64,000 bases of DNA, from positions 62,001-126,000 of IMG/VR virus record IMGVR_UViG_3300036853_000446; one strand, given 5' to 3'. Under the pieces are notes generated by a model. It made no database searches, was not told the origin of the DNA, and saw nothing but the letters and a program-made list of their open reading frames with translations. The position numbers were made by a program, and so were the translations under genes. Below, piece by piece: positions 3,171 through 46,577 of the stretch (its first letter is position 1; each line of letters starts with the position of its first letter).

Positions 3171-3185
3171 ATAAAAGGAACTTCA
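3171..3185 (-). promoter_or_regulatory. CTTTT-core motif copy
   Basis: TGAAGTTCCTTTTAT; the TGA is also the patatin stop codon. Confidence 0.35.
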
Positions 3186-4037
3186 GCTCATTTGACCCAC
3201 GGCGTCGGCATATCCTTGCGCCCGCATCTGCCGAACGCCCACTGGACCAAAGTCCAGAGAATCAACGGCCAGGTGCGTGCTCGGCTGCAAGAGACGAATT
3301 TTCACGTCCTTATACTCTCCTGTCAGCTTTGCCAGATCGTTCTTGAGTCCCGCCTCTTTGAGATCGCCCCGCGTCACCTCGTCGAGGGCGAGATCGATGG
3401 CCCGGAGCAGGCGCCAAAGGGTTGTCTTTCCCTTTGGGTCCCAATTGCCCCGGTCATCCGGATTGCTCGTCATGATGACGTCGATCTCAGTTGCGCCAGC
3501 CCGAATCGCCTCTCCGATGGGCGTCACGTTTCGCAGACCGCCATCCGTCCATTCTTCACCGTCAATCTTCAATGCCTTGAAGAAGCCCGGGAAACTCGAA
3601 GACGCCAGCACCCACGACACGAAATCCGGCGACTTCTCGGTAGCCACGAAGTAGTTCCCCGTGACCCAGCTCACTGCACCAAGCCTCACCAACCGGCCCG
3701 AAGCCGCGATCGCGTTCGTGTCTAGTTCTTGCTGAACCCATTTTTGCAGAGGGCCTGAGTCGTAGACGGAGCACTTCCAAAGTGCCGCGACGTACCAGAG
3801 AAACCAGAATTTCCGAATATTCGATGTCGCGACGCGATCCCACATCGAGGAGACCTTGGCATAAGCCGCCGCTGGATCCCCGAGCGGCGCTTGACTCAAA
3901 ACTGCTGCATTGAGAGCCCCTACCGACACACCGCAGACGATCTCATAATCTCGCTTCTGATCGAGCAAAAGATAGCGCAAACCGCCTTCCTGAAACGCGC
4001 CTTTACTCCCTCCACCGCTGAGCACGAGGGCTCTCAT
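3183..4037 (-). CDS. Patatin-like phospholipase (284 aa)
   Basis: Oxyanion loop LVLSGGGSKG, nucleophile elbow GVSVG, SSSFPGFF, catalytic DGG. Confidence 0.92.
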   Translation of the reverse strand: MRALVLSGGGSKGAFQEGGLRYLLLDQKRDYEIVCGVSVGALNAAVLSQAPLGDPAAAYAKVSSMWDRVATSNIRKFWFLWYVAALWKCSVYDSGPLQKWVQQELDTNAIAASGRLVRLGAVSWVTGNYFVATEKSPDFVSWVLASSSFPGFFKALKIDGEEWTDGGLRNVTPIGEAIRAGATEIDVIMTSNPDDRGNWDPKGKTTLWRLLRAIDLALDEVTRGDLKEAGLKNDLAKLTGEYKDVKIRLLQPSTHLAVDSLDFGPVGVRQMRAQGYADAVGQMS

Positions 4038-6563: not shown

Positions 6564-7871
6564 TTACCCGACGTTGTCTACTACAATGTTCTCTGCGTAG
6601 ATGGGACCCAAGACCGTTCCCGTAATCCCGCCCCCACTGAGGTCGGGCACAGTGATGGAATTGAGATTGAGTGCAATCCCAGAAATGGAACTACGGGAGG
6701 GCCCGGCGCCAAACGTAAACCCATAGCCGGAATACGTCGTGGCCGCCGCAGCGACGAATATGAGGACGCGGCATCCCGTGCCAGTACCCGCGGTGATGAC
6801 TTCCCCGATCCCGACAGCGGCGGCGCCTGACACACCGGTCTTAGCGTTGATGTCACCCGTCTGCTGAAAGATAATGCCCAGCTTATCCGCGGCGCTCGTG
6901 GTGAAGCCAGTCGTCGCATTACCGACGTTGTTGAACGTGAACCCGCTGGTGTTGACCGTAGCAAGGGCTCCAGTGACGACAAACGCAATCAAGGTCCGTG
7001 ATTCGCAGCTCCCCGTATAGTTGACGGTGATAGTCCCGGAATCGCCCGGAGCGACGGCCAGAGTGAAGATTCCCGTCGAGCACCCTGCCGTCGTTGTCGT
7101 GTTCGAGCTGGCCCGAAGGGTCATGCCCGACGCTCCGAACATGACCGTCGTCAACACCGCGTTGCCGATCGGCGAGGGCACCGATTCGGCGCCGCCACAA
7201 ACGACGAGTACGGCGCTGTCCACGGTGGAAGGCACCGTGTATGCCAACGTGAGAGAGCTTCCTGCGACAATGGAACTCGCCGTCTGAACGTTGAAGACCG
7301 TAGCGCCCCCCGTGTTGGGGGCACCTTCATTCATCACCCACCGACCCACCAGGCCAGAGACGATTCTGTCGCGCCCCCGCGACGCATAAATGGTCTGGAC
7401 CTCATCGGCGGTCAGAGCCCGATTGTAAACGCGGACATCTTCCATCAGGCCGTTGAAGACCCGTAACGGCCATGGGCCGTTACCGATTACCAAGCTTTGG
7501 GTGTTCACGCTGCCTGTGGCGCCCGTGGCCGTGGTGGCCTCTTGAACCCCGTCGATATACATCCGCAGCAAGGCCGCGGTCGTGTCGTAGACACCACAGA
7601 CGTGGTGGAGCGTGTTACTCGCGAGGGTCGTCGTACTCTGCACGACGGGGAAGGATCCATTGAAGTTTCCGAACTCCGCACCGTCCCAGACTTGGATTGA
7701 CAGTTCCCAACCGGTCCCGCCAGCCTGCGGCTCTTTGGAAAGAATTTCGTGCCTCACGCCCGTGGCAGAGCGCTTGACCCAAGCCATCGCTGTAAAGGCC
7801 ACACCCGTTCCGAAGTCTAGGTTGTCCCCGCAGTCGATGTAGTTCGTCAAACCGTCAAAAGCGAAGGCCAT
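6564..7871 (-). CDS. LamG/concanavalin A-like lectin domain tail protein (435 aa)
   Basis: FDG..NYI, FT..AWVK, HHVCGVYD, RMYIDG, LVIG, FNGLMEDVRVYNRALTADEV are LamG-3 hallmarks. Confidence 0.85.
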   Translation of the reverse strand: MAFAFDGLTNYIDCGDNLDFGTGVAFTAMAWVKRSATGVRHEILSKEPQAGGTGWELSIQVWDGAEFGNFNGSFPVVQSTTTLASNTLHHVCGVYDTTAALLRMYIDGVQEATTATGATGSVNTQSLVIGNGPWPLRVFNGLMEDVRVYNRALTADEVQTIYASRGRDRIVSGLVGRWVMNEGAPNTGGATVFNVQTASSIVAGSSLTLAYTVPSTVDSAVLVVCGGAESVPSPIGNAVLTTVMFGASGMTLRASSNTTTTAGCSTGIFTLAVAPGDSGTITVNYTGSCESRTLIAFVVTGALATVNTSGFTFNNVGNATTGFTTSAADKLGIIFQQTGDINAKTGVSGAAAVGIGEVITAGTGTGCRVLIFVAAAATTYSGYGFTFGAGPSRSSISGIALNLNSITVPDLSGGGITGTVLGPIYAENIVVDNVG

Positions 7872-7872
7872 T

Positions 7873-10800
7873 TCAGGTGTACTCCACGCCCAGCTCGAGG
7901 AGCACCCAGTCCCCCGCCAACGTGTCGCTGACGTTCGTACCGACGCGGGTGAGTTCGTATTGAACGAACGTGCCCGCGCTCAAGCTCAAACTGGAGAGCG
8001 TAATGGTCTGCGAGTCATATTGAAAGTTTGTATTGGTCGGGATGCTGATCGCGGTGAGATTAGTTACCGAACTCCAGGCACCCACCGCAGCGTTGTCGGG
8101 AATCGTTCGACGGTAGAGAGCGGGGACCACGGCGACCGTCCCGCCGGGTGCCGTCTGCGCTCTGGATTTGAAATAGAGGGTGACGTTCGTTGCTCCAGGC
8201 GGAATGGTCTCGGACCAGCTGACACCCTCCTGAGTGGTATCGTCGAAGCGTCGCACCGAGAGCCCAATGTTCACTAGGTCCGCCGACAACGGCGCAAAGG
8301 CGTTGACGGTCCAGTTCGCGTTGACGGGGGAGGTGAGGTCCGCAGCCTGATACCACCGGCGCTGCAACGGAATGCTGTCGAGCTTCGTCTTGTCCGTAGC
8401 GACCATGAATCCGTTCACGGAAGTCGTCACCGCCGCATGCAAGGTGCCACTCGTCTGTGCCCCGTGATCGTGGACGTGGTCAGACCGGACAAAGGTCGTC
8501 GCCGCCCCGGCTGCGTTCGCCGTGCCGATGGCTACGGGGGCAGCTGCAGCGACCGTGTGTTGATGATCCGATCGAGCAAGTGTTGTGGCCGTCCCTTCAA
8601 CAGCCGAGTTGCCAACAGCCACAGCACCCGCGGCGGGAGTGGCTGTGGTGACGTCGTGCTTATGGTCGCTTCGCGCGGCATCCGTTGCGACACCCGCCAC
8701 AGCCGCCGCCTTGGTGACGTCGGCTGGGGCATTCGACGTCAGACCCACGACCTGAGTGACGGAGAAGGTCAGAGCCGTCGTACCGACGGTAATGGGGTCG
8801 TTTGTCGTGAGAATCGCGACATGGTCACCATTGGCGGCGCCTTCCGAGATTCGGATGATGACTGCAGCGCGGACCTCTGCATCGGCATCGAAGTCTACAG
8901 CACGGGACCAGGCGCCTGCAGCCACGGCATAGATGCCGTTCTGAGACCCGGTTGACTGATCTTTAGCCAGGACCCGATCTCCAGCAACGGCCGAAACTCC
9001 ATCAATAGTCTGCGTGCCGGACAGCGTCAGATTTGCCGTCGAAGCCAATCGCACTGGCTGCTTGATGGCCGTGACGGTGCTGTCTAGGTTTACCTTGTCA
9101 GCGGCGAGCATGAAGCCATTGGCAGAACTCGTGACGACGGCGTGCAGGGTGCCGCTCGTTTGAGCCCCATGATCGTGAACGTGGTCGGAACGGATAAAGG
9201 TCGTTGCTACTCCGGCTGCGTTTGCCGTTCCAATGGCGACCGGGACCGCTACTGCCACCGAGTGAGTATGGTCCGAGCGGGCTAGGGTGATTGCCGTGCC
9301 TTCCGCCGCCGAAGCTGCTGCCGTGATCGCGCCCACTACTGCCGTGGACACGTCGTGCTTGTGATCCGCTCGCGCAGCCGTCGCGCCCACCCCAACCGCT
9401 GCTGCAGCTTTGGTAACGTCACTAGGAGCTGTCGAGGCGAGCGCCGCAGCCCCCGTAGCCATTCCGTCGAGTCTGGTCTTGTCTGTCGCCGAAAGGAAAC
9501 CCGATACTGATGTCGTCGCAGCTGCATGCAGAGTGCCACTCGACTGTGTACCGTGATCGTGAACATGATCTGACCGAGCGAACGTAGTGGCCACCCCGGC
9601 CGAGTTGGCTATTCCAACGGCTACTGGAATACCGGCGGCTATCGAATGGGTATGATCAGAACGCGCCATCGTAACGGCGGAGCCCTCGGTTGCCAAATCG
9701 CCGATGGCCGCGACCCCAGCCGCCGCGGTAGCTATGTCGTGCTTGTGGTCGACTCGCGCAGCCGTCGTGCCTATCCCAACGGTTGCCGCAGCCTTGGTAA
9801 TGTCCACGGGTGCACTCGACGCCAGTGCCGCGGCAGCCGCCGAAACCCCATCGAGTTTGGTCTTGTCAGCGGCCAACATAAAGCCGTTGGCAGCACCCGT
9901 CACCACCGCATGCAACGTGGCAACGGTTTGAGCCCCGTGATCGTGTACGTGATCGGATCGAACAAAGGTCGCGGCAGATCCGGCCGAGTTGACTGTTCCA
10001 ATGGTCGAGGGGGCAACCACCGCAATCGTGTGTTGGTGGTCACTACGGGCTAGAGTCGTTGCCGTGCCCTCAGCAGCCGTGTTGCCAGCAGCAACGGCCC
10101 CAGCAACCGGCACCGCCGTCGTGACGTCGTGTTTATGATCGGCTCTTGCTGCGTCGGCAGCCGTCCCAACGACCGCTGTGCTCTTGGTAATGTCGACAGG
10201 AGCCGTCGAGGCAAGAGCGGCGGCACTGACCGCAACCCCGTCGAGTTTTGTCTTGTCAGCGGCCAGCATGAAGCCGTTGGTCAATCCCGTCACTGCCGAA
10301 TGAAGTGTCCCGCTCGTCTGGGCACCGTGGTCATGGACGTGGTCGGACCGGACAAAAGTCGTTGCCGTTCCAGCTGCGTTCGCAGTCCCGATGGCCACGG
10401 GCGTGGCTGCAGTGACCGTGTGCTGGTGATCTGAACGAGCTAGGGTGGTGGCAGTGCCTTCGGCTTCCGAGTTGCCGACCGCCACCGCACCGGTTACCGG
10501 CGTGGCCGTCGTGACGTCATGTTTATGGTCGGCTCTGGCTGCATCCGTCGCGACCCCGACCGCGGCCGCTGCCTTCGTCACATCTGCGGGGGCCGTCGAT
10601 GTCAGGGGCGCAGCGCCCGCCGAGACCCCGTCGAGTTTGGTCTTGTCCGAAGCCGACAGGAAACCAGCAACGGAGGTTGTCGCCGCGGCGTGGAGCGTCC
10701 CACTCGTCTGGGCACCATGGTCATGGACGTGATCAGACCGAACCAGCGTCGTGGCCGACCCGGTGGAGTTGGCCGTACCGATCGCTACAGGAACGGCTGC

Positions 10801-13101
10801 GGTAACCGTATGAGTGTGGTCCGAGCGCGCGAGCGAGGTAGCCGTCCCTTCTGCAGCGACGTTGCCGACGGCAACGGCTCCCGCCGCCGGGGTCGCTGTA
10901 GAGACGTCGTGTTTATGGTCGGCCTTGGCCGCATCCGTCGCGACCCCGACCGCGGCCGCTGCCTTCGTCACATCTGCGGGCGGAGCGGCGGTCAAGGTCA
11001 GAGCAACCGGAGTTGCAAACGCGAGACCCGTCACCGCTAAAGTGATCGGATCGTCCGTCGTCAGCTGGAAAAGCTTGTTTCCGTTGGCGGTGCCCTCAGA
11101 AACGGGGACGACCGTGCCGCCGCGAACCTCGCTGCTCGCGTCGAAATCCACAGCCCGAACCCAGGCACCAGCGGCGACTACATAGATGCCGTTTTGAGAC
11201 CCCGTCGACTGGTCCTTGACGAGCACACGCTGCGTCGCGATGACCGAGACGCCGTCGATCGTCTGAGGTGCAGAAAGGGTGATGTTGGCCGTCGTGGCCG
11301 CTCGGACCGGCTGCTTGATCGCCGTCGTGATGCTGTCAAAGTTGACTTTGTCAGCGGCGGACATGAAACCCGCAATCGCAGTCGTCGCCACCGCGTGCAG
11401 GGTGCCACTGGTTTGGGCACCGTGATCGTGAACGTGGTCACTCCGGGTGAATGTCGTTGCTGCTCCACCCGAGTTGGCTATACCAATAGCAACCGGAGTG
11501 CCCCCCGCCACCGAGTGGGTGTGGTCGCTCCGAGCTAGAGATACAGCCGTACCCTCGGTTGCGGCACCTCCGATGGCTACAGCGCCGGTCGCGGCCGTCG
11601 TGATGTCGTGCTTATGATCAGACCGGGCAAGCGACGTAGCCGTACCCTCGGCGGCGGCCGCCTTCGTAACGTTGACGGGGATGGCCGTTGAAATGTCATG
11701 CTTGTGATCTGCCCGGGCTGCGTCTGTAGCGACGCCCACGGCAGCGGCGGCCTTCGTGACGTCGACGGGTGCCGCGGCCGTCAAAGTTAGGGCGACGGGA
11801 GTTGCAAAGACGAGAGCTGTCGAGCCCAACGCGATCGGGTCGTCCGAGATGAGCTGGAAAATCCGATTCGCGTTCGTCGTACCTTCCGAGACGGCGACGA
11901 TGAGCCCACCTCGAACTTCGGCGCTATTGTCGAAATCTACAGAGCGAGTCCAGGCGCCCGTTGCAGCAACGTAAATGCCGTTGTTGGCTCCCGTGATCTG
12001 GTCCTTGACCAGGACCCGGTCAGCTGCGACGACGGACACGCCGTCGATCGTCTGAGTACCCGACAACGTGATGTTTGCGGTCGTGGCCGCCCGCACTGGC
12101 TGCTTGATCGCCGTGACCGTACTGTCGAAATCCGCCTTGTCAGCGGCAGACATGAACCCAGCCACGGAAGTAGTGACCACCGCGTGCAGGGTGCCGCTCG
12201 TCTGGGCACCATGATCGTGGACATGGTCACTTCGGGTGAACGTCGTTGCCGAGCCGGCGGCATTCGCCGTTCCAATCGCCACCGGGATCCCCCCAGCAAT
12301 CGAGTGGGTGTGGTCCGAGCGCGCGAGCGACGTCGCGCTACCTTCCGTAGCCGAATCCCCGATGGCGGCAGCTCCAACCGTAGCCGTTGTGATATCGTGC
12401 TGGTGGTCTGCCCGGGCCGCGTCGGTGGCCACCCCGACGGCAGCCGCTGCCTTCGTGACGTTGACCGGAGCCGACAGAGTGAGGGCTGCAGATCCCTCGG
12501 AGACCCCGTCGAGCTTGGTCTTGTCCGGAGCCGATAGGAAGCCTGCAACAGAGGTCGTGGCCACCGCATGAAGAGTGCCACTCGTCTGGGCTCCGTGGTC
12601 GTGGACGTGGTCGCTTCGGACAAAGGTCGCCGCAGAGCCTGCGGCATTCGCGGTGCCAACTGTGACCGGGTTGCCCCCTGCCACCGAGTGGGTATGATCC
12701 GAACGGGCTAAAGAAGTGGCCGATCCTTCGGCAGCAACGCCTCCAATGGACACGGCACCCGGGGTTGCCGTCGAGACATCGTGCTTGTGGTCTGCGCGTG
12801 CCGCATCCGTTGCAACACCGATGGCAGCTGCAGTCGTCGTAACATCGACGGGGGGCGTAGTAGTGAGCCCCGTGCTCCCCCCGACTCCGTCCCAAGTGGG
12901 CGTAATCGAGGTGAGGACCCAGAGCGTACTGTCGTCCTCTTGAAGTGCCAGTCGATCTAGGTCATCTACCGTCAGATTTCCAAGAATGGCGGGCACACCA
13001 ACGGTCGGCGTGAAGGCAACTCGACTCGCCGCGTTGGCAAACCTCCACGCAATAGGAGTGTGAGGTCCCTTAGCGATTGTAACTTTTCGATGCTCGCCCA
13101 T
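7873..13101 (-). CDS. Long tail fibre with nine His-x-His repeat modules (1742 aa)
   Basis: Nine ~125-155-aa units with ARADHKHD / ARSDHxH / RSDHVHDH, three copies of the QTIDGV..DRVLVKDQ..NGIY..GAW.R..D fibre domain, distinct C-terminal domain. Confidence 0.85.
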   Translation of the reverse strand: MGEHRKVTIAKGPHTPIAWRFANAASRVAFTPTVGVPAILGNLTVDDLDRLALQEDDSTLWVLTSITPTWDGVGGSTGLTTTPPVDVTTTAAAIGVATDAARADHKHDVSTATPGAVSIGGVAAEGSATSLARSDHTHSVAGGNPVTVGTANAAGSAATFVRSDHVHDHGAQTSGTLHAVATTSVAGFLSAPDKTKLDGVSEGSAALTLSAPVNVTKAAAAVGVATDAARADHQHDITTATVGAAAIGDSATEGSATSLARSDHTHSIAGGIPVAIGTANAAGSATTFTRSDHVHDHGAQTSGTLHAVVTTSVAGFMSAADKADFDSTVTAIKQPVRAATTANITLSGTQTIDGVSVVAADRVLVKDQITGANNGIYVAATGAWTRSVDFDNSAEVRGGLIVAVSEGTTNANRIFQLISDDPIALGSTALVFATPVALTLTAAAPVDVTKAAAAVGVATDAARADHKHDISTAIPVNVTKAAAAEGTATSLARSDHKHDITTAATGAVAIGGAATEGTAVSLARSDHTHSVAGGTPVAIGIANSGGAATTFTRSDHVHDHGAQTSGTLHAVATTAIAGFMSAADKVNFDSITTAIKQPVRAATTANITLSAPQTIDGVSVIATQRVLVKDQSTGSQNGIYVVAAGAWVRAVDFDASSEVRGGTVVPVSEGTANGNKLFQLTTDDPITLAVTGLAFATPVALTLTAAPPADVTKAAAAVGVATDAAKADHKHDVSTATPAAGAVAVGNVAAEGTATSLARSDHTHTVTAAVPVAIGTANSTGSATTLVRSDHVHDHGAQTSGTLHAAATTSVAGFLSASDKTKLDGVSAGAAPLTSTAPADVTKAAAAVGVATDAARADHKHDVTTATPVTGAVAVGNSEAEGTATTLARSDHQHTVTAATPVAIGTANAAGTATTFVRSDHVHDHGAQTSGTLHSAVTGLTNGFMLAADKTKLDGVAVSAAALASTAPVDITKSTAVVGTAADAARADHKHDVTTAVPVAGAVAAGNTAAEGTATTLARSDHQHTIAVVAPSTIGTVNSAGSAATFVRSDHVHDHGAQTVATLHAVVTGAANGFMLAADKTKLDGVSAAAAALASSAPVDITKAAATVGIGTTAARVDHKHDIATAAAGVAAIGDLATEGSAVTMARSDHTHSIAAGIPVAVGIANSAGVATTFARSDHVHDHGTQSSGTLHAAATTSVSGFLSATDKTRLDGMATGAAALASTAPSDVTKAAAAVGVGATAARADHKHDVSTAVVGAITAAASAAEGTAITLARSDHTHSVAVAVPVAIGTANAAGVATTFIRSDHVHDHGAQTSGTLHAVVTSSANGFMLAADKVNLDSTVTAIKQPVRLASTANLTLSGTQTIDGVSAVAGDRVLAKDQSTGSQNGIYAVAAGAWSRAVDFDADAEVRAAVIIRISEGAANGDHVAILTTNDPITVGTTALTFSVTQVVGLTSNAPADVTKAAAVAGVATDAARSDHKHDVTTATPAAGAVAVGNSAVEGTATTLARSDHQHTVAAAAPVAIGTANAAGAATTFVRSDHVHDHGAQTSGTLHAAVTTSVNGFMVATDKTKLDSIPLQRRWYQAADLTSPVNANWTVNAFAPLSADLVNIGLSVRRFDDTTQEGVSWSETIPPGATNVTLYFKSRAQTAPGGTVAVVPALYRRTIPDNAAVGAWSSVTNLTAISIPTNTNFQYDSQTITLSSLSLSAGTFVQYELTRVGTNVSDTLAGDWVLLELGVEYT
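8368..12864 (-). repeat. Intragenic tandem repeat array of the fibre gene
   Basis: About 390-nt period; exact 50-nt duplicate at 10541..10590 and 10931..10980. Confidence 0.9.
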
Positions 13102-13158: not shown

Positions 13159-13611
13159 TCAGCCGTACAATAACAATTCGTCTTCATCGGCGAGCCACCC
13201 ATCCACGCCCACCGTTGGGCTCACAGCTTCAAACGTGGTCCCGTCGGCCGAAAGAAGCACCTGCCCCGCCAACGTTGGCGTGAACGTGGCAATCCCCGTC
13301 CAAACCGCCGCCTCAGCCGTATCGTCGACACAAATGAACACGGCTCCCGTAGATGCAATAACCCACCACATGCCAGTCGAACAGCCGGCGCTGGTGTCGT
13401 CGGTTGCTGTCGGGCTCCGTGTCGGGTGCACGAAGACAGGGCGGCCATTGAAGACCCCGAGGGCATCCAGGAACTTGAATCGATCTGTGACATAGCGTAC
13501 ACCCCCCGCGCCGGTCGGGTCGCCACCAGCAAGGCCGCCAGGGCCCTGGTCGTAGAGAATGATGCCCTCATCCTCACGCTCGCCTGGGAAGCGGTCCGCA
13601 GTCCTCGGCAC
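13159..13611 (-). CDS. Tail fibre-associated protein (150 aa)
   Basis: PTATDD.SAG.STG.WW....G.VFICVD.T..AAVW motif typical of phage fibre segments. Confidence 0.55.
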   Translation of the reverse strand: MPRTADRFPGEREDEGIILYDQGPGGLAGGDPTGAGGVRYVTDRFKFLDALGVFNGRPVFVHPTRSPTATDDTSAGCSTGMWWVIASTGAVFICVDDTAEAAVWTGIATFTPTLAGQVLLSADGTTFEAVSPTVGVDGWLADEDELLLYG

Positions 13612-17086: not shown

Positions 17087-17932
17087 TCATTTGACTGGGA
17101 TATCCCAGCTCTTTGTAGCCGCCAGAACGGCCGCCATGTGTTTGCACACGAAATTCTGACGCTCGGGGTCTCGAATGTCGGGCGGCGACGCGGTGCCCAT
17201 CAGAGGTCCGAGTTGATAGTCCTCGGGCCCGGTTGCATGATACTCTGGCCCCTGCCACTGCCACGCCGGACACGAGCACGAGAGTTCGAGGTCCATCTTC
17301 GCAAACTTTGTCGTATTGGCGCGTGGACGGACCGCGCGGATCTTGACCGCGTAGACGTGCTTGCCCTTCACGCTGAAGATCCAGCGCAGATTTTTACGAT
17401 CGGCGCGCTTCAAGGTGACCTTGACCTTGCGAGAACGACTGACAAACTTTGGATTCAGCCCCTCGAGAATGTGCTCGGCCGTCGCCGCGACCCGGGCCGC
17501 CGTGCAGTCCTGATATCGAAGCCGCAGGATCGGGGCGCGCTCGAGCAAGTGAAGCGCCGCAACGAACGCCGGATCTGCGCCCGCGTTGTGGGTGTTCGGC
17601 TTGTCGTCCCGATACGGGTATTTCGTCTTGGACGAGTCGTCGTCCTTGTCGCCCAGGCCCATGAACGACGGGGACGTGCCTCCCTGCTCGACCCAGCGTG
17701 TCTCCGCAGGCAGGTCTTCTTCCTTTGCCCAGCTGTCAGGACCGTCGATCCGATGGGGAGACCCCGGCGCCGTGTCGGGCTCGCGGATGTCTTCCTCCGG
17801 CTTTGAGAACGTCTTGTAACCCACCTCGTCGCCGTCAAGAGAGATACCCTTCCCCGCAGGGCTGCCGCTCGGCAGCTGAGCCGTCGCCCTGGGGTTGAGA
17901 TCCGCTGGACGAGAGACGAGGGGCTCTCTCAC
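17087..17932 (-). CDS. SWIM-type zinc finger protein (281 aa)
   Basis: CSCPAWQWQG...CKH in the C-terminal half, preceded by ARVAA. Confidence 0.65.
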   Translation of the reverse strand: MREPLVSRPADLNPRATAQLPSGSPAGKGISLDGDEVGYKTFSKPEEDIREPDTAPGSPHRIDGPDSWAKEEDLPAETRWVEQGGTSPSFMGLGDKDDDSSKTKYPYRDDKPNTHNAGADPAFVAALHLLERAPILRLRYQDCTAARVAATAEHILEGLNPKFVSRSRKVKVTLKRADRKNLRWIFSVKGKHVYAVKIRAVRPRANTTKFAKMDLELSCSCPAWQWQGPEYHATGPEDYQLGPLMGTASPPDIRDPERQNFVCKHMAAVLAATKSWDIPVK

Positions 17933-22873: not shown

Positions 22874-23752
22874 TCAGAAGCGCGTCACGATGATGCGCAC
22901 CAACCCTCTAGGGTTGTGGGCCCCCAGGCCGAGGTTCTCAAATACAGAAAATCCAATCGTCCGTGCTTTCGGATCATCCGCTGAAAGTACGGTGAGTTCC
23001 GTGCGCACGGGCACTCGACCGAACATCTCTGGCTCGGTCGCCAGATAAATGAATCCGGCGGGAACCAAACGACTCGTGATGATCTGCGCGCCCCACAGAG
23101 TTGCCTGGAGACCCGTCTTCAGCAACGTGGCTTGCGACTCGATATCCAAGATGTCGCGACCAAACTTGCGGATGTCCGCGTAGTCGACCGCATTCATGAA
23201 AATGCGCGCGACCCTCAAGTCGTGGCGTTCGATCTCCGCAAATCCGTCCGCGAGGACGCTCGGCGAGACCGGGGCCACCACGGCCAAGTCTGGGTTCGTA
23301 CCGCCCGCGAGGGTATCGAAGCCGCTGACGGCGATCGAATCGAGTACGGCAAAGACGCGCTCGTCTTCCGCCGCCTGAATCTGGGCCTTCGCGAGGTCCT
23401 GAGCGCGCTCGATGAGGTCGAAGCGACGCTCTTTGATCTGCGTGAGCGGGATCTCGGGGTTCGAGGCGATCTCGAACAGCGGGAAGATCACCCGCCGAGG
23501 CTTTTGAATCGAGACGATGTTCTGGCCTTCCTCGCCGACCACGAACGCTGTGACTTCCGGGTCTTTGTCGTAGATCGGCAAAGCACCGTCAGGCAGCTGC
23601 TCGACGAGGAAGGTCTTTCGACCCACCGCCGTGTAGTCGCGACGAAGGCGTAGGGGTTGAACCATCGAGGCGGCCAACTTGGCGCGCCCTGCCGCAGTCT
23701 TGATGTACTCACTGATGAGTTGCTGCTTGGCTTGGTTTGAAACTTGTTGCAT
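22874..23752 (-). CDS. Major capsid protein, HK97-like (292 aa)
   Basis: Position after protease, scaffold and decoration genes; followed by a strong terminator; FEIASNPEIP...DLIERAQ..AKAQIQAAED..F and terminal GFSVFENLG pattern. Confidence 0.8.
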   Translation of the reverse strand: MQQVSNQAKQQLISEYIKTAAGRAKLAASMVQPLRLRRDYTAVGRKTFLVEQLPDGALPIYDKDPEVTAFVVGEEGQNIVSIQKPRRVIFPLFEIASNPEIPLTQIKERRFDLIERAQDLAKAQIQAAEDERVFAVLDSIAVSGFDTLAGGTNPDLAVVAPVSPSVLADGFAEIERHDLRVARIFMNAVDYADIRKFGRDILDIESQATLLKTGLQATLWGAQIITSRLVPAGFIYLATEPEMFGRVPVRTELTVLSADDPKARTIGFSVFENLGLGAHNPRGLVRIIVTRF

Positions 23753-23808: not shown

Positions 23809-24405
23809 TCAGACGCGGAGGTCGAACACCATGAGAGAGTTGTCGGCGTCAGGGGCGACCTTGACGACACCGAGGAGAGTGGCCGTGGCGCCTTCGACGA
23901 GGTTATCGCCGGAGCCGTCTGACTTGTTGGTGAGCAACCCGTTCAGCGAGGCGTAAAGAAGGTCGCCCACTGCGTACGTGAGGGTTGCGCCACCCGTGAG
24001 GTCCTCGGTTTCCCAGATCGAAGTGCCGAAGCAGCCCAAACCAGAAAAATACGGACCACGACCCGACGCTACGCCTGGGGTGTTTTCGAAGGCGTTGCCG
24101 TTGGCGTCGTTGATGAAGATGCCGAGGGGCCTCCGACCCGTAAACGGGGTCAGCGCGGGACCACCGATGAAGCCGTTCCCTGCGTCGGGACGGGTAAAGG
24201 CGACCGAGCCGCCGAGGACGCCCAGCTGGGAAAGTCCAGCAAGGGTCGCCGAGATTGTGCCTGCCGTGGTGATCAGTGGATTGGGCTGCATGAACGCATC
24301 GGGAGCGAGAAGCCCCACCGTGTTCCGAAAGCCGATGTGGAACGCTTGAATGCGACCACTTGTTTCCCTGAAGTCACCCGAGCCTTGGCCTAGAGATAGG
24401 GGCAT
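23809..24405 (-). CDS. Head decoration/cement-like protein (198 aa)
   Basis: Between scaffold and capsid genes; RPLGIF.ND...YAVGDLLYAS.NGLLT...LLGVV..AP beta-tulip-like pattern; AAGGAG SD. Confidence 0.6.
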   Translation of the reverse strand: MPLSLGQGSGDFRETSGRIQAFHIGFRNTVGLLAPDAFMQPNPLITTAGTISATLAGLSQLGVLGGSVAFTRPDAGNGFIGGPALTPFTGRRPLGIFINDANGNAFENTPGVASGRGPYFSGLGCFGTSIWETEDLTGGATLTYAVGDLLYASLNGLLTNKSDGSGDNLVEGATATLLGVVKVAPDADNSLMVFDLRV

Positions 24406-44769: not shown

Positions 44770-45798
44770 TCAGGCCCCGACTCCCGATCCGCAAAATCGA
44801 CCGTCCGGGCCTTGGGAGGTTACCTCCCACCGCTTCCGAGTCTGATTGCGCACTAGCAAACTGAGCCACGCGCAATTGCAATGCCAATTCTGGGCCTCGC
44901 ATTCGGCGCATTGCCCGCAGGAATAATGCCCTTCCGTGTTCATCCGCGCCATCACGTAGGCGGACGAAGGGCGCTCGCCCATGTCTCGAAAGAACTCCTC
45001 GAAGGAATTCCGCCACCTCGAGCACACCGTGATCCCGATCCCGCCGTAGCGAGGATACCTATCGCTCCTAGAGTTAAAGCATCGCGTGTGAATGCCCACC
45101 CATGCTCGATACTCCGGAGTCTTGGTCATTCCGTGTCTGGTATTTGCGTGCGAAGGACCTGACCTGCACGGCCGACGATTCGTGTTCTGCTCAGCCCTCG
45201 TAGCCCACCGGACGTTGCCCGGCTCGTAATTCCCATCGTTATTGATTCGATCAAGTGAATGCTGGGGACTCGGCCGAGGCCCAACGTAGTTGTAAAAAGC
45301 CTGAAAGTCGTGGATCCACGCGGAGTGCATCCGAATGCCACGCCCGCCGTAATCGTCATAGGCGTGATGGTTGACATCGAAACAGCGCGACTTGATCGCA
45401 CCCCAGCATCTATGCTCCGGCTTATAGCTCATTCCGTGTCTGAAATTAGTGAGGCCTCCATTTCGCTCAACACCACTGACGACGGGCCACTGTGGCCGTC
45501 TTCCAGGTCTCCTCGGCCGGCAATTAGCTGCCTGTTCGACCCAAGTTGCCCAGCGCACGTTGCCTGGCTCGTAGTTACCCTCGTTGTTGATACGATCAAG
45601 CGAATGATCCGGAGACGGCTTCGGGCCCACGTGCTCATAGAACGCCTTGAAATCGTGCACCCATTCAGGATGCACCGTTATTCCGCGTCCGCCATAGTCA
45701 GGGTACCTTTGACTATTGCAATTCAAACACCGAGCTTTGATTTGACTCCAACAGTGGTATTCGGGGGTCTTACTCAACCCGTGTGATTTGACGGCCAT
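44770..45798 (-). CDS. HNH-like homing endonuclease-family protein with three tandem domains (342 aa)
   Basis: Three HG..K.PE...W..I..RC......Y..YGG.GI.....W...F..F....G..PS units; first two carry SLDRINN.GNYEPGNVRWAT. Confidence 0.8.
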   Translation of the reverse strand: MAVKSHGLSKTPEYHCWSQIKARCLNCNSQRYPDYGGRGITVHPEWVHDFKAFYEHVGPKPSPDHSLDRINNEGNYEPGNVRWATWVEQAANCRPRRPGRRPQWPVVSGVERNGGLTNFRHGMSYKPEHRCWGAIKSRCFDVNHHAYDDYGGRGIRMHSAWIHDFQAFYNYVGPRPSPQHSLDRINNDGNYEPGNVRWATRAEQNTNRRPCRSGPSHANTRHGMTKTPEYRAWVGIHTRCFNSRSDRYPRYGGIGITVCSRWRNSFEEFFRDMGERPSSAYVMARMNTEGHYSCGQCAECEAQNWHCNCAWLSLLVRNQTRKRWEVTSQGPDGRFCGSGVGA

Positions 45799-45860: not shown

Positions 45861-46577
45861 TCAAGTGATCTCGTCGCCGCCCCGTCCTTGCCACTGTGGC
45901 AATTTCACTTCGTGCAAAAGATTGAAGCCACGTTGCGCTATTTTACAGAAGATTGCTCGGTACGGCTCGTACTTTGAGTTTTGAGCAGCGATGTCTTCGA
46001 GCCGCGCCACCGCCTTGAAGAACCGGTGCCGCACCCTGCCTTGGGTCAAGTTCAGCTGCTGCGCGACGACGGACTGGCACGTGGTTTCCCACATATGAAT
46101 CAGGATCTGGACGTCGATGTGAATGCCATCGATCGTGCGCTGATCGCCCTCCTGGGATGCCTTCCCACCCGTCCGAGCTACGAAAACCTCAGACAAATCT
46201 ATCAGCATCTGCTCGCGCGACACGTCGGGGATCTCGAGCAAGAACTTGATTCGTTTGATGCCTCGCGCCAAACGATACGAGACCGCGGCCTGTGTCATGC
46301 CGAAGATCGTGGCAATGTCGGCCTGACGCTTGTCCATGAGGAAATACAACTCGATGATATCCGCCTCGCGCACGGGTATCCGCTCGAGGAGCGGGTGCAG
46401 CTTTACCTTGTATTCCTGAGTCTCGAGGAGGGCTCGCATCTCCGCGAGCTGCTCATTCTCCTCGATATCGGCCCGTTCATCCTCATCATTATCCGCCCAG
46501 CCATCATACCGCGGGTCGCAGAAAACGAAGCGGTTCAACTCATTGGGATCGATTGGAACGACGTAACCATTACTCAT
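45861..46577 (-). CDS. Sigma-70 region 4-like protein with two HTHs (238 aa)
   Basis: EADIIELYFL...QADIATIFGMTQAAVSYRL.R and QSVVAQQLNLTQGRVRHRF; no recognisable region 2. Confidence 0.7.
   Translation of the reverse strand: MSNGYVVPIDPNELNRFVFCDPRYDGWADNDEDERADIEENEQLAEMRALLETQEYKVKLHPLLERIPVREADIIELYFLMDKRQADIATIFGMTQAAVSYRLARGIKRIKFLLEIPDVSREQMLIDLSEVFVARTGGKASQEGDQRTIDGIHIDVQILIHMWETTCQSVVAQQLNLTQGRVRHRFFKAVARLEDIAAQNSKYEPYRAIFCKIAQRGFNLLHEVKLPQWQGRGGDEIT

What the first reader, a model, noticed from the sequence alone, without database searches (positions are those of the whole stretch)
7873..13101. Tail fibre with 28 D-H-x-H motifs in nine modules and three interspersed globular domains
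Seen: architecture U-U-I-U*-I-U-U-U-U-U-I-U-C. Each U has three DHxH motifs plus a TLH; U* has a fourth from an internal duplication (total 28). The I domains start at 12105, 11316 and 9063. An exact 50-nt duplicate lies 390 nt apart (10541, 10931), implying recent duplication or gene conversion. Known: in trimeric fibres such as the T4 gp37 tip, HxH pairs from three chains bind one metal ion octahedrally (seven Fe in gp37). Inference: a trimer could bind up to ~28 metal ions, relevant to iron piracy or siderophore-receptor mimicry ideas; module number probably varies, tuning fibre length.
Basis: partly seen in the sequence, partly recalled or inferred. Interest (0 to 1): 0.6.

Follow-up and report, generated by a model that had tools for sequence, protein, structure and literature searches.

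The report
Histidine-studded modular fibre of a huge phage
This gene of a 408-kb soil phage encodes a very long three-chain fibre, most likely a tail fibre, whose shaft repeats a paired-histidine motif 28 times; in solved relatives that motif clamps a buried metal ion, so it is an extreme member of a large, unnamed but not new kind of phage fibre.

Summary
ORF 7873..13101 (-) encodes 1742 aa with exactly 28 DHxH motifs (0.23 expected by chance) and 9 TLH. The order is N-U-U-I-U*-I-U-U-U-U-U-I-U-C. The 50-nt exact duplicate lies at 10541 and 10931.

The protein belongs to a very large, unnamed metagenomic family of more than 900 clusters, with up to 33 DHxH per protein. No Pfam or NCBIfam model covers the U module.

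A profile of 78 U modules hits one solved protein: FtbO, a side-fibre protein of the Listeria monocin, where HxH pairs hold ferric ions (E 6.7e-7). One module is predicted to form a homotrimer (ipSAE 0.69, best control 0.00). The motif histidines are 90-100% conserved across the 78 modules.

In three smaller phages, homologues sit where the tail-fibre gene lies. A syntenic orthologue has the same N and C ends but a different module order.

The modules are old duplicates: third-codon identity is 26-48%. The 50-nt identity is one short gene-conversion patch.

The best reading is a trimeric, metal-riveted modular tail fibre with a carbohydrate-module-like tip. Metal binding, and tail rather than head location, are inferred. 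Iron piracy is not supported, because solved HxH sites are buried.

The parts
12868..13101 (-). N-terminal domain (aa 1-78), presumed virion-attachment end
   Evidence: 72% identical to the N-terminus of orthologue P0006; weaker matches in five other family members. No PDB match. Atlas gives leads only, all tail-related and under or at 0.90.
12502..12867 (-). U module 1 (aa 79-200): three sub-repeats of about 30 aa, each ending in DHxH, plus a cap (HG-x6-TLH ... GF[ML]xxxDKxKLD)
12118..12483 (-). U module 2 (aa 207-328)
11785..12117 (-). I domain 1 (aa 329-439), globular knob
   Evidence: Profile hits PDB 9nx3 capsid decoration protein (E 6.5e-21) and the Legionella phage LME-1 tail fibre in 9efk (E 1.7e-11). 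Monomer model pLDDT 93.8.
11329..11784 (-). U* module 3 (aa 440-591) with a fourth DHxH from a 30-aa chimeric a/b sub-repeat
10996..11328 (-). I domain 2 (aa 592-702)
9076..10995 (-). Five consecutive U modules 4-8 (aa 703-826, 833-956, 963-1086, 1093-1214, 1221-1342), joined by 6-aa linkers
   Evidence: The trimer prediction used aa 833-956.
10931..10980 (.). Copy 1 of the exact 50-nt repeat, at the start of module 4 (aa 708-724)
10541..10590 (.). Copy 2 of the exact 50-nt repeat, at the start of module 5 (aa 838-854)
8743..9075 (-). I domain 3 (aa 1343-1453)
8371..8742 (-). U module 9 (aa 1454-1577)
7873..8370 (-). C-terminal all-beta domain (aa 1578-1742) plus the stop codon; probable receptor-binding tip
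   Evidence: 84% identical in P0006 and 41-49% in six other fibres. Model pLDDT 62.6, all beta. VIA Z 7.1-5 to CBM22/35/6/36 and to phage T1 and lambda tail-tip chains, none above Z 8.
6564..7871 (-). Downstream 435-aa protein with an N-terminal Laminin_G_3 (ConA-like lectin) domain. Its ATG lies one base after the fibre's stop (TGAAATG). Likely a partner of the fibre.
   Evidence: Pfam E 1.4e-27; junction. The pairing recurs in the orthologue locus L009. In the Mu-like phage L014 the fibre homologue is also followed by a protein with a weak Laminin_G_3 hit; that protein shows no sequence similarity to this one.
13159..13611 (-). Upstream 150-aa gene, conserved next to the fibre in the orthologue locus
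   Evidence: 59% aa identity to the 149-aa gene of L009

Best explanation
The gene encodes a homotrimeric virion fibre, most probably a tail (host-recognition) fibre, of a huge soil phage related to Bacillus phage G. A 78-aa N-terminal domain anchors it. The shaft is made of nine modules of about 124 aa. Each module is three hairpin-like sub-repeats of about 30 aa ending in (S/A)DHxH, followed by a cap that ends in GF[ML]xxxDKxKLD. Small hydrophobic residues pack on the three-fold axis. The two histidines of each motif face the inter-chain interior, so three chains would give six histidines around one buried metal ion (iron in the solved examples). These sites would act as structural rivets that fix the register and stiffen the rod: 28 sites, or up to 37 if the conserved H93/H102 pair of each cap forms a fourth site. 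Three globular I domains of about 110 aa are inserted exactly at module boundaries as knobs. A beta-sandwich C-terminal domain of about 165 aa, resembling carbohydrate-binding modules, is the likely receptor-binding tip. It may work together with the translationally coupled lectin-domain protein encoded next. Shown here: the motif counts, the architecture, the homology to FtbO and to I-domain proteins, conservation, variation in module order, and the positions of homologues in other phages. Inferred: trimer geometry, metal binding and metal identity, location on the tail, and glycan binding.
For: There are 28 DHxH against 0.23 expected. The U-module profile hits only FtbO in the PDB (E 6.7e-7). 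FtbO is a trimeric side-fibre rod of the Listeria monocin whose stalks coordinate ferric ions through His67/His69 and His122/His124. Trimer prediction of aa 833-956 with 4 Fe: score 0.69 (runs 0.69, 0.70, 0.67) against a best of 3 controls of 0.00. That mark was reached by 20 of 30 proteins solved as pairs of one chain and by 1 of 23 solved as single chains. The runs agree in at least 97% of contacts and the partner pLDDT is at least 87. These counts hold only roughly, because my own alignment and a ligand were used. Same-residue contacts at V9, A22, A23, V41, L55, A56, F84, M113 and L121 mark the axis. H29, H62 and H91 touch V9, V41 and I72 of a neighbouring chain, and residues 29/31/33 and 58/60/62 face the interface. 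Across 78 modules from about 50 proteins, H27 is kept in 78/78, H60 and H62 in 77, H89 and H91 in 76, and H29 in 70; the preceding Asp is kept in 69-77. Amino-acid identity between modules is 60-85% while third-codon identity is 26-48%, which means purifying selection on old copies. Tail placement: homologue P0037 follows Baseplate_J and precedes the integrase. P0123 directly follows a Mu Gp48 baseplate homologue and is followed by a LamG protein. P0157 closes a tail module ahead of the lysin. The only isolate-phage hits are annotated as putative tail fibre. The I domain occurs in the LME-1 tail fibre. HxH sites in R-pyocin fibres, T4 gp37 and P2 gpV are octahedral six-histidine sites, and the pyocin iron is described as buried.
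Against: No metal was measured. The complex tool gives no coordinates and does not score the Fe ions, so histidine convergence on the axis is only indirectly supported. The trimer pass may reflect memory of solved fibres. At the position aligned to FtbO's iron ligands this protein has T-L-H, that is, one histidine rather than two. There is no detectable sequence similarity to T4 gp37. In this genome the gene lies about 10 kb downstream of the major capsid protein gene and about 64 kb from the only Baseplate_J hit. The I domain also occurs in a solved capsid decoration protein. The neighbouring genes have no recognisable tail function. The C-domain model is of low confidence (pLDDT 62.6) and its fold matches stay under Z 8.
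Confidence: 0.6

Rival explanations
1. It is a head fibre or capsid-decoration fibre. The same trimeric metal-clamped rod projects from the capsid surface and serves adhesion to surfaces or first, reversible contact with the host.
For: The gene lies in the head-proximal part of the structural block, about 10 kb after the major capsid gene, and is far from the Baseplate_J hit. The I domain's best solved match is a 'capsid decoration protein' (9nx3, E 6.5e-21). The Cyanophage PSS2 homologue of the I domain and phrog_2647 are annotated as capsid or head decoration.
Against: All three homologues with an interpretable context sit in tail-fibre slots. FtbO is a tail side-fibre. The I domain is equally present in tail fibres. 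The related phage Tunturi_5 has three large genes annotated as tail fibre in the same place after its capsid gene. Structural genes are scattered in huge phages.
Confidence: 0.2
2. The metal sites serve iron piracy, or mimic siderophore-bound iron so that the fibre docks on a host iron-uptake receptor (the 'Ferrojan horse' idea).
For: The site number would be very high (28-37 per trimer). The hypothesis is discussed in the literature for HxH tail fibres.
Against: The solved R-pyocin HxH site is described as buried in the shaft and is held by six histidines, which leaves nothing exposed for a receptor. The motifs here lie in the shaft modules, not in the distal C-terminal domain. The source is soil, not iron-limited ocean. 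The papers found offer motif counts and docking only, with no experimental test.
Confidence: 0.05
3. The DHxH motifs do not bind metal. They form inter-chain hydrogen-bond or salt-bridge ladders (Asp-His-Arg), or act as a pH-sensitive switch.
For: The Asp before each HxH and the Arg three residues upstream are as conserved as the histidines. No metal was observed here. The FtbO iron site aligns to the TLH position, not to a DHxH motif.
Against: Every HxH on a three-fold axis named in the pyocin-fibre paper holds a metal ion: R1/R2 pyocin fibres, T4 gp37, the P2, phi92 and R2-pyocin spikes, and T4 gp12 with zinc; FtbO does too. The single-sequence alignment pairs FtbO's second site (NHTH) with a DHKH motif here. 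An Asp next to a ligand histidine is a common second-shell feature of metal sites (my own knowledge).
Confidence: 0.1

Closest known systems
FtbO, side-fibre protein of the Listeria monocytogenes F-type tailocin monocin (PDB 9j1l; PMC11830787)
   Same: This is the only solved protein detectably homologous to the U module (profile E 6.7e-7 over module positions 74-121). It shares the 'H..ATT..GF[ML]SxxDKxKLD' element. It is a trimeric rod made of repeated stalks, and HxH pairs from three chains hold ferric ions.
   Different: FtbO has 146-159 aa, two stalks and two iron sites. This protein has nine modules with three or four motifs each, plus I domains and a C-terminal tip. At the aligned iron site it keeps only one histidine (TLH). 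The a and b sub-repeats have no counterpart in FtbO.
T4 gp37 long-tail-fibre tip (2XGF), and the R1/R2 pyocin fibre shaft
   Same: These are trimeric fibres in which HxH from three chains forms an octahedral six-histidine iron site on the axis. The pyocin fibre also has knob domains, a shaft with a buried iron, and a lectin-like C-terminal domain, which is the same general plan.
   Different: The U-module profile finds neither gp37 nor the pyocin fibre in the PDB at E<=1. gp37 has seven irons and the pyocin fibre one. The repeat here is a regular higher-order module of about 124 aa.
Alteromonas phage R22Y gp12 and similar 'iron-binding' tail fibres (PMC11705849)
   Same: Tail fibres reported for their multiple HxH motifs and discussed as iron ligands.
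   Different: R22Y has six motifs, inferred from models and docking only. No relationship to it was tested here.
I-domain proteins: capsid decoration protein 9nx3 and the Legionella phage LME-1 tail fibre orf22 (9efk)
   Same: The globular I domain is homologous (profile E 6.5e-21 and 1.7e-11). The same domain occurs in 357 phage records, annotated variously as tail fibre, virion protein or capsid decoration.
   Different: Those proteins carry one copy and no DHxH modules. Here three copies are inserted between shaft modules.

Membership tests
HxH metal-clamped trimeric phage fibres and spikes (T4 gp37, R-pyocin fibre, P2 gpV type) | HxH motif in a beta-structured shaft | tested here: met
   28 DHxH plus 9 overlapping HDH. 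The interface pattern is i, i+2: residues 58/60/62 and 29/31/33.
HxH metal-clamped trimeric phage fibres and spikes (T4 gp37, R-pyocin fibre, P2 gpV type) | Homotrimer with a three-fold axis running through the repeat | tested here: met
   This is a prediction only. Score 0.69 against a best of 3 controls of 0.00; at least 97% contact agreement between runs; partner pLDDT at least 87; same-residue contacts at nine positions. The mark was reached by 20 of 30 solved one-chain pairs and by 1 of 23 solved single chains.
HxH metal-clamped trimeric phage fibres and spikes (T4 gp37, R-pyocin fibre, P2 gpV type) | Six histidines coordinate one metal ion octahedrally on the axis | not testable with these tools
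   The complex tool returns no coordinates and does not score ligands.
HxH metal-clamped trimeric phage fibres and spikes (T4 gp37, R-pyocin fibre, P2 gpV type) | Sequence homology to T4 gp37 or the pyocin fibre | tested here: not met
   The profile of 78 modules against all PDB sequences at E<=1 returns only FtbO and one chance hit.
FtbO-like stalk repeat (9j1l) | Significant sequence match that includes the GF[ML]SxxDKxKLD element | tested here: met
   Profile E 6.7e-7; single sequence E 0.0036.
FtbO-like stalk repeat (9j1l) | HxH at the position of FtbO's iron ligands His67/His69 | tested here: not met
   The aligned residues are T100-L101-H102, so one histidine is kept. H93 is conserved together with H102 (64 of 78 modules have both; 12 lack the whole hairpin) and might supply the second ligand, but this is untested.
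Phage tail fibre (by genomic position) | Gene placed just after the baseplate wedge genes, at the end of the tail module | tested here: inconclusive
   Met for homologues in three smaller phages. In this genome the only Baseplate_J hit lies about 64 kb away, and the neighbouring genes are unrecognisable.
Curated protein families (Pfam-A, NCBIfam) | Match above the curated cut-off | tested here: not met
   No Pfam hit above cut-off and no NCBIfam hit. PHROGs match mainly the I domain, with mixed labels of tail fibre and head decoration.

The most novel reading that the evidence does not exclude
Each module holds four axial metal sites rather than three. The fourth would be built from the always co-occurring H93 and H102 of an optional 9-residue hairpin, at the place where FtbO binds iron. 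The fibre would then carry 37 ions per trimer, far more than the seven of T4 gp37. It would represent a widespread, unnamed class of 'metal-riveted' modular rods whose length is set by shuffling old modules kept apart at the DNA level. In that case virions of this class could hold a few hundred tightly bound metal ions each.
Probability: 0.3. Interest if true: 0.6.

Novelty: new variant of a known kind. Interest (0 to 1): 0.45.

Why it matters
Metal-clamped HxH sites are known from a handful of solved fibres with one to seven ions. This protein, and the 900 or more unnamed relatives found here, suggest that the principle is used on a much larger scale, as a regular, shuffleable building block for very long fibres. 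No curated family describes this block. It offers a defined unit of about 124 aa for structural work. It also gives a concrete way to test how much metal phage particles lock up, and a natural example of repeats kept identical in protein but scrambled in DNA. If the tip and the coupled lectin-domain protein bind glycans, the locus would also be a guide to host recognition in huge soil phages, whose hosts are largely unknown.

Tried and rejected
- Megablast of 20 kb of the window against isolate phages found nothing.
- PHROGs and Pfam scans of 20 neighbouring proteins gave no tail or head assignment for the fibre's direct neighbours, apart from the Laminin_G_3 domain.
- tblastn of the 522-aa upstream protein against phages found nothing. 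Its Atlas look-alikes all scored under 0.9, so they are leads only.
- Phage_sheath_1 was not found in the genome.
- BLAST of the window's neighbours against the neighbours of homologues in L002 and L004 showed no similarity.
- The closest relative by capsid protein, LR745208 (83% identity), has no DHxH fibre. It has only a 386-aa ORF with an I domain at the syntenic place.
- Bacillus phage G annotation was uninformative.
- Foldseek of the I-domain model against the PDB found nothing. VIA-align gave a best Z of 4.1, which is not meaningful.
- Foldseek of the C-domain model found nothing at E<=0.001.
- The search for related loci with the 78-row alignment failed for lack of a conserved stretch. 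A 16-row alignment found only three MAG contigs: Rhodobacteraceae, Holophagaceae and Gemmatimonadota.
- Laying the contigs of the source run showed no joints, so there is no evidence for or against module-number variants in the population.
- The T4 gp37 paper is not held in the library.
- DUF2793, found in homologue P0004, lies outside its I domains and was dropped as an identity for the I domain.
- The big representative search was not used, because relatives are abundant.
Full report
**Observation**

The window is bases 62001-126000 of a 407,634-bp IMG/VR virus record. Its genes all lie on the minus strand.

ORF 7873..13101 encodes 1742 aa. A script counts exactly 28 DHxH motifs, against 0.23 expected from the composition, and 9 TLH. 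It also finds 9 extra HDH triplets that overlap the third motif of each module, as DHVHDHG.

Alignment and HMM mapping give N(1-78)-U-U-I-U*-I-U-U-U-U-U-I-U-C(1578-1742). Each U module (122-124 aa) has four pieces:
- Three related sub-repeats of about 30 aa, each ending in (S/A)DHxH.
- A cap of the form HG-x6-TLH ... GF[ML]xxxDKxKLD.

U* holds one extra 30-aa sub-repeat that is a chimera of sub-repeats a and b.

The 50-nt exact duplicate at 10541 and 10931 is real. It is the only exact repeat of 25 nt or more in the gene.

The database gene call (1563 aa, starting inside module 1) is too short. The orthologue aligns from residue 1, and the upstream gene is 13159..13611.

**Which phage**

Terminase, portal, protease and major capsid genes lie upstream of the fibre gene in the direction of transcription.

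The capsid protein is:
- 83% identical to an uncultured 485-kb phage (LR745208).
- 49% identical to Tunturiibacter phage Tunturi_5 (308 kb, soil, acidobacterial host).
- 40% identical to Bacillus phage G.

The only public run that holds the gene is a soil metagenome, probably the source sample.

**Family**

Pfam and NCBIfam give nothing for this protein. PHROGs match mostly the I domain, with mixed 'tail fiber' and 'head decoration' labels.

Word searches found two sets of relatives:
- 381 clusters of 958-3048 aa.
- 553 clusters of 211-672 aa.

Both searches were capped at 8000 candidates. Almost all hits are unnamed and from metagenomes.

Among the 239 listed relatives the median DHxH count is 8 and the maximum is 33. 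Only three reach 28. So this protein is an extreme member of a large uncharacterised family, not a one-off. Proteins longer than 3048 aa were not searched.

**Link to solved structures**

A profile of 78 U modules (alignment A1) hits one meaningful PDB protein, FtbO (E 6.7e-7). FtbO is the trimeric central rod of the Listeria monocin side fibre. Its two stalks coordinate ferric ions through His67/His69 and His122/His124.

The match covers the third sub-repeat and the cap. FtbO's HTH aligns to T-L-H here. In the single-sequence alignment, FtbO's second site (NHTH) pairs with a DHKH motif.

T4 gp37 and the pyocin fibre were not hit at E<=1. The resemblance to them is therefore one of principle, not of detectable sequence. 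In those proteins the HxH site is an octahedral six-histidine site on the axis, and the pyocin iron is described as buried.

**Trimer test**

One module (aa 833-956, with A1 as its alignment) was folded in three copies with four Fe.
- Score: 0.69 (runs 0.69, 0.70, 0.67); best of 3 controls 0.00.
- Calibration: the mark was reached by 20 of 30 proteins solved as pairs of one chain and by 1 of 23 solved as single chains.
- The runs agree in at least 97% of contacts, and the partner's pLDDT is at least 87.
- The counts hold only roughly, because my own alignment and a ligand were used. The pass may also come from memory of solved fibres.

Same-residue contacts at V9, A22, A23, V41, L55, A56, F84, M113 and L121 define a hydrophobic axis. 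H29, H62 and H91 touch V9, V41 and I72 of a neighbouring chain. Residues 29/31/33 and 58/60/62 face the interface.

This is consistent with histidines placed next to the axis. The tool gives no coordinates and does not score the ions, so convergence of the histidines on the axis is not shown.

**Conservation**

Across the 78 modules the motif residues are kept as follows:

| Residue | Modules that keep it (of 78) |
|---|---|
| H27 | 78 |
| H29 | 70 |
| H60, H62 | 77 each |
| H89, H91 | 76 each |
| Asp before each motif | 69-77 |

H93 and H102 are both present in 64 modules. They are absent together in 12 modules where a 9-residue hairpin is deleted. They could form a fourth site at the position of FtbO's iron site, which would give 37 sites in all. 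This is an inference only.

**Evolution of the repeats**

Module pairs are 60-85% identical in protein and 62-76% in DNA, but only 26-48% at third codon positions. The longest exact run between any pair is 23 nt or less, apart from the 50-nt run between modules 4 and 5.

The modules are therefore old copies held by selection on the protein. The 50-nt identity is one short gene-conversion or recombination patch, not a recent duplication.

An independent assembly of the source run breaks at this repeat. Depths are 35.7 for the 50-mer, 21.3 for the unitig between the repeats and 16.5 for the flanks. It shows no joints.

**Module number in relatives**

Locus L009 is syntenic: a 149-aa gene, the fibre, a Laminin_G_3 protein and a 321-aa gene, with flanking proteins 52-71% identical.

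Its fibre, P0006, has the same N domain (72% identity) and C domain (84%) but only 1344 aa.

The closest relative by capsid protein, LR745208, lacks a DHxH fibre altogether.

**Tail or head**

For tail:
- P0037 lies after Baseplate_J and before the integrase.
- P0123 lies directly after a Mu Gp48 homologue and is followed by a protein with a weak Laminin_G_3 hit, the same kind of pairing as here. The two LamG proteins share no detectable sequence similarity.
- P0157 closes a tail module ahead of the lysin.
- FtbO is a tail side fibre.
- The LME-1 tail fibre carries the I domain.
- Tunturi_5 has three large genes annotated as tail fibre after its capsid gene.

For head:
- The gene lies near the capsid gene and about 64 kb from the only Baseplate_J hit.
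- The I domain's best solved match is a capsid decoration protein.

I put tail at roughly 3 to 1 over head.

**End domains**

- I domain: the monomer model is confident (pLDDT 93.8) but has no convincing fold match in the PDB.
- C domain: the model is weak (pLDDT 62.6) and all-beta. It gives middling matches (Z 5-7.1) to carbohydrate-binding modules and to tail-tip chains of phages T1 and lambda. A glycan-binding tip is plausible but unproven.
- Downstream gene: it starts one base after the fibre's stop and has a ConA-like lectin domain.

**Verdict**

The structural reading, a trimeric fibre with HxH metal sites, is well supported by homology, conservation and a controlled prediction, but it has not been measured. 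The iron-piracy idea and the 'recent duplication' idea are not supported.

This is a new, extreme variant of a known kind, and it belongs to a large family that has no name.

Noticed in passing
window 3183-4037 (-): A patatin-like phospholipase (Pfam E 8e-29) lies just downstream of the fibre cluster. A patatin gene also follows the related fibre P0025 in locus L010 (14189-15049). This may be a conserved virion-associated or lysis-related lipase.
   Followed up: partly
window 6564-7871 (-); L009 4727-6028; L014 11920-14808: A Laminin_G_3 protein follows the fibre here (stop and start as TGAAATG) and in the orthologue locus L009. In the Mu-like phage L014 the protein after the fibre homologue has only a weak Laminin_G_3 hit and no detectable sequence similarity to the one here. 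The pairing suggests a conserved fibre partner, perhaps an adhesin or an assembly factor.
   Followed up: partly
window 7873-13101; database protein P0002: The public gene call for this protein starts at a GTG inside module 1 (1563 aa), which drops the N-terminal domain and three DHxH motifs. The orthologue supports the ATG at 13101.
   Followed up: yes
window 10561-10960: In the source run's contigs, the 400-nt unitig between the two 50-nt repeats has depth 21.3 against 16.5 in the flanks. This could be a minority genotype with one extra module, or noise.
   Followed up: no
window 44770-45798 (-): A 342-aa protein gives three separate HNH-endonuclease matches (PHROG E 4e-91). That is an unusual triple HNH arrangement, and it sits next to a sigma-factor-like gene (45861-46577).
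   Followed up: no
window 22874-23752 (-) and 23809-24405 (-): The major capsid protein is 83% identical to the uncultured 485-kb phage LR745208 and 40% to Bacillus phage G. The 198-aa gene just upstream matches LR745208 at 43% and sits where phage G has its capsid decoration gene gp26.
   Followed up: partly
P0073, P0088 (homologues): Relatives of the DHxH shaft region carry labels from giant viruses of eukaryotes: Clandestinovirus ('pectinesterase/thioester hydrolase') and Faustovirus ('cell wall anchor protein'). The repeat may therefore cross virus realms, or these records may be contaminated.
   Followed up: no
window 11785-12117 (I domain model m0b1e94da3326): The I domain folds with very high confidence (pLDDT 93.8, pTM 0.87) but has little regular secondary structure and no convincing PDB fold match, even though its sequence matches 9nx3 and 9efk. 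Those entries may lack this part in the fold library.
   Followed up: partly
window 17087-17932 (-): A 281-aa protein between the capsid gene and the fibre has a SWIM zinc-finger match (E 2.4e-4). It is conserved in LR745208 (43%) and in Tunturi_5 (34%).
   Followed up: no
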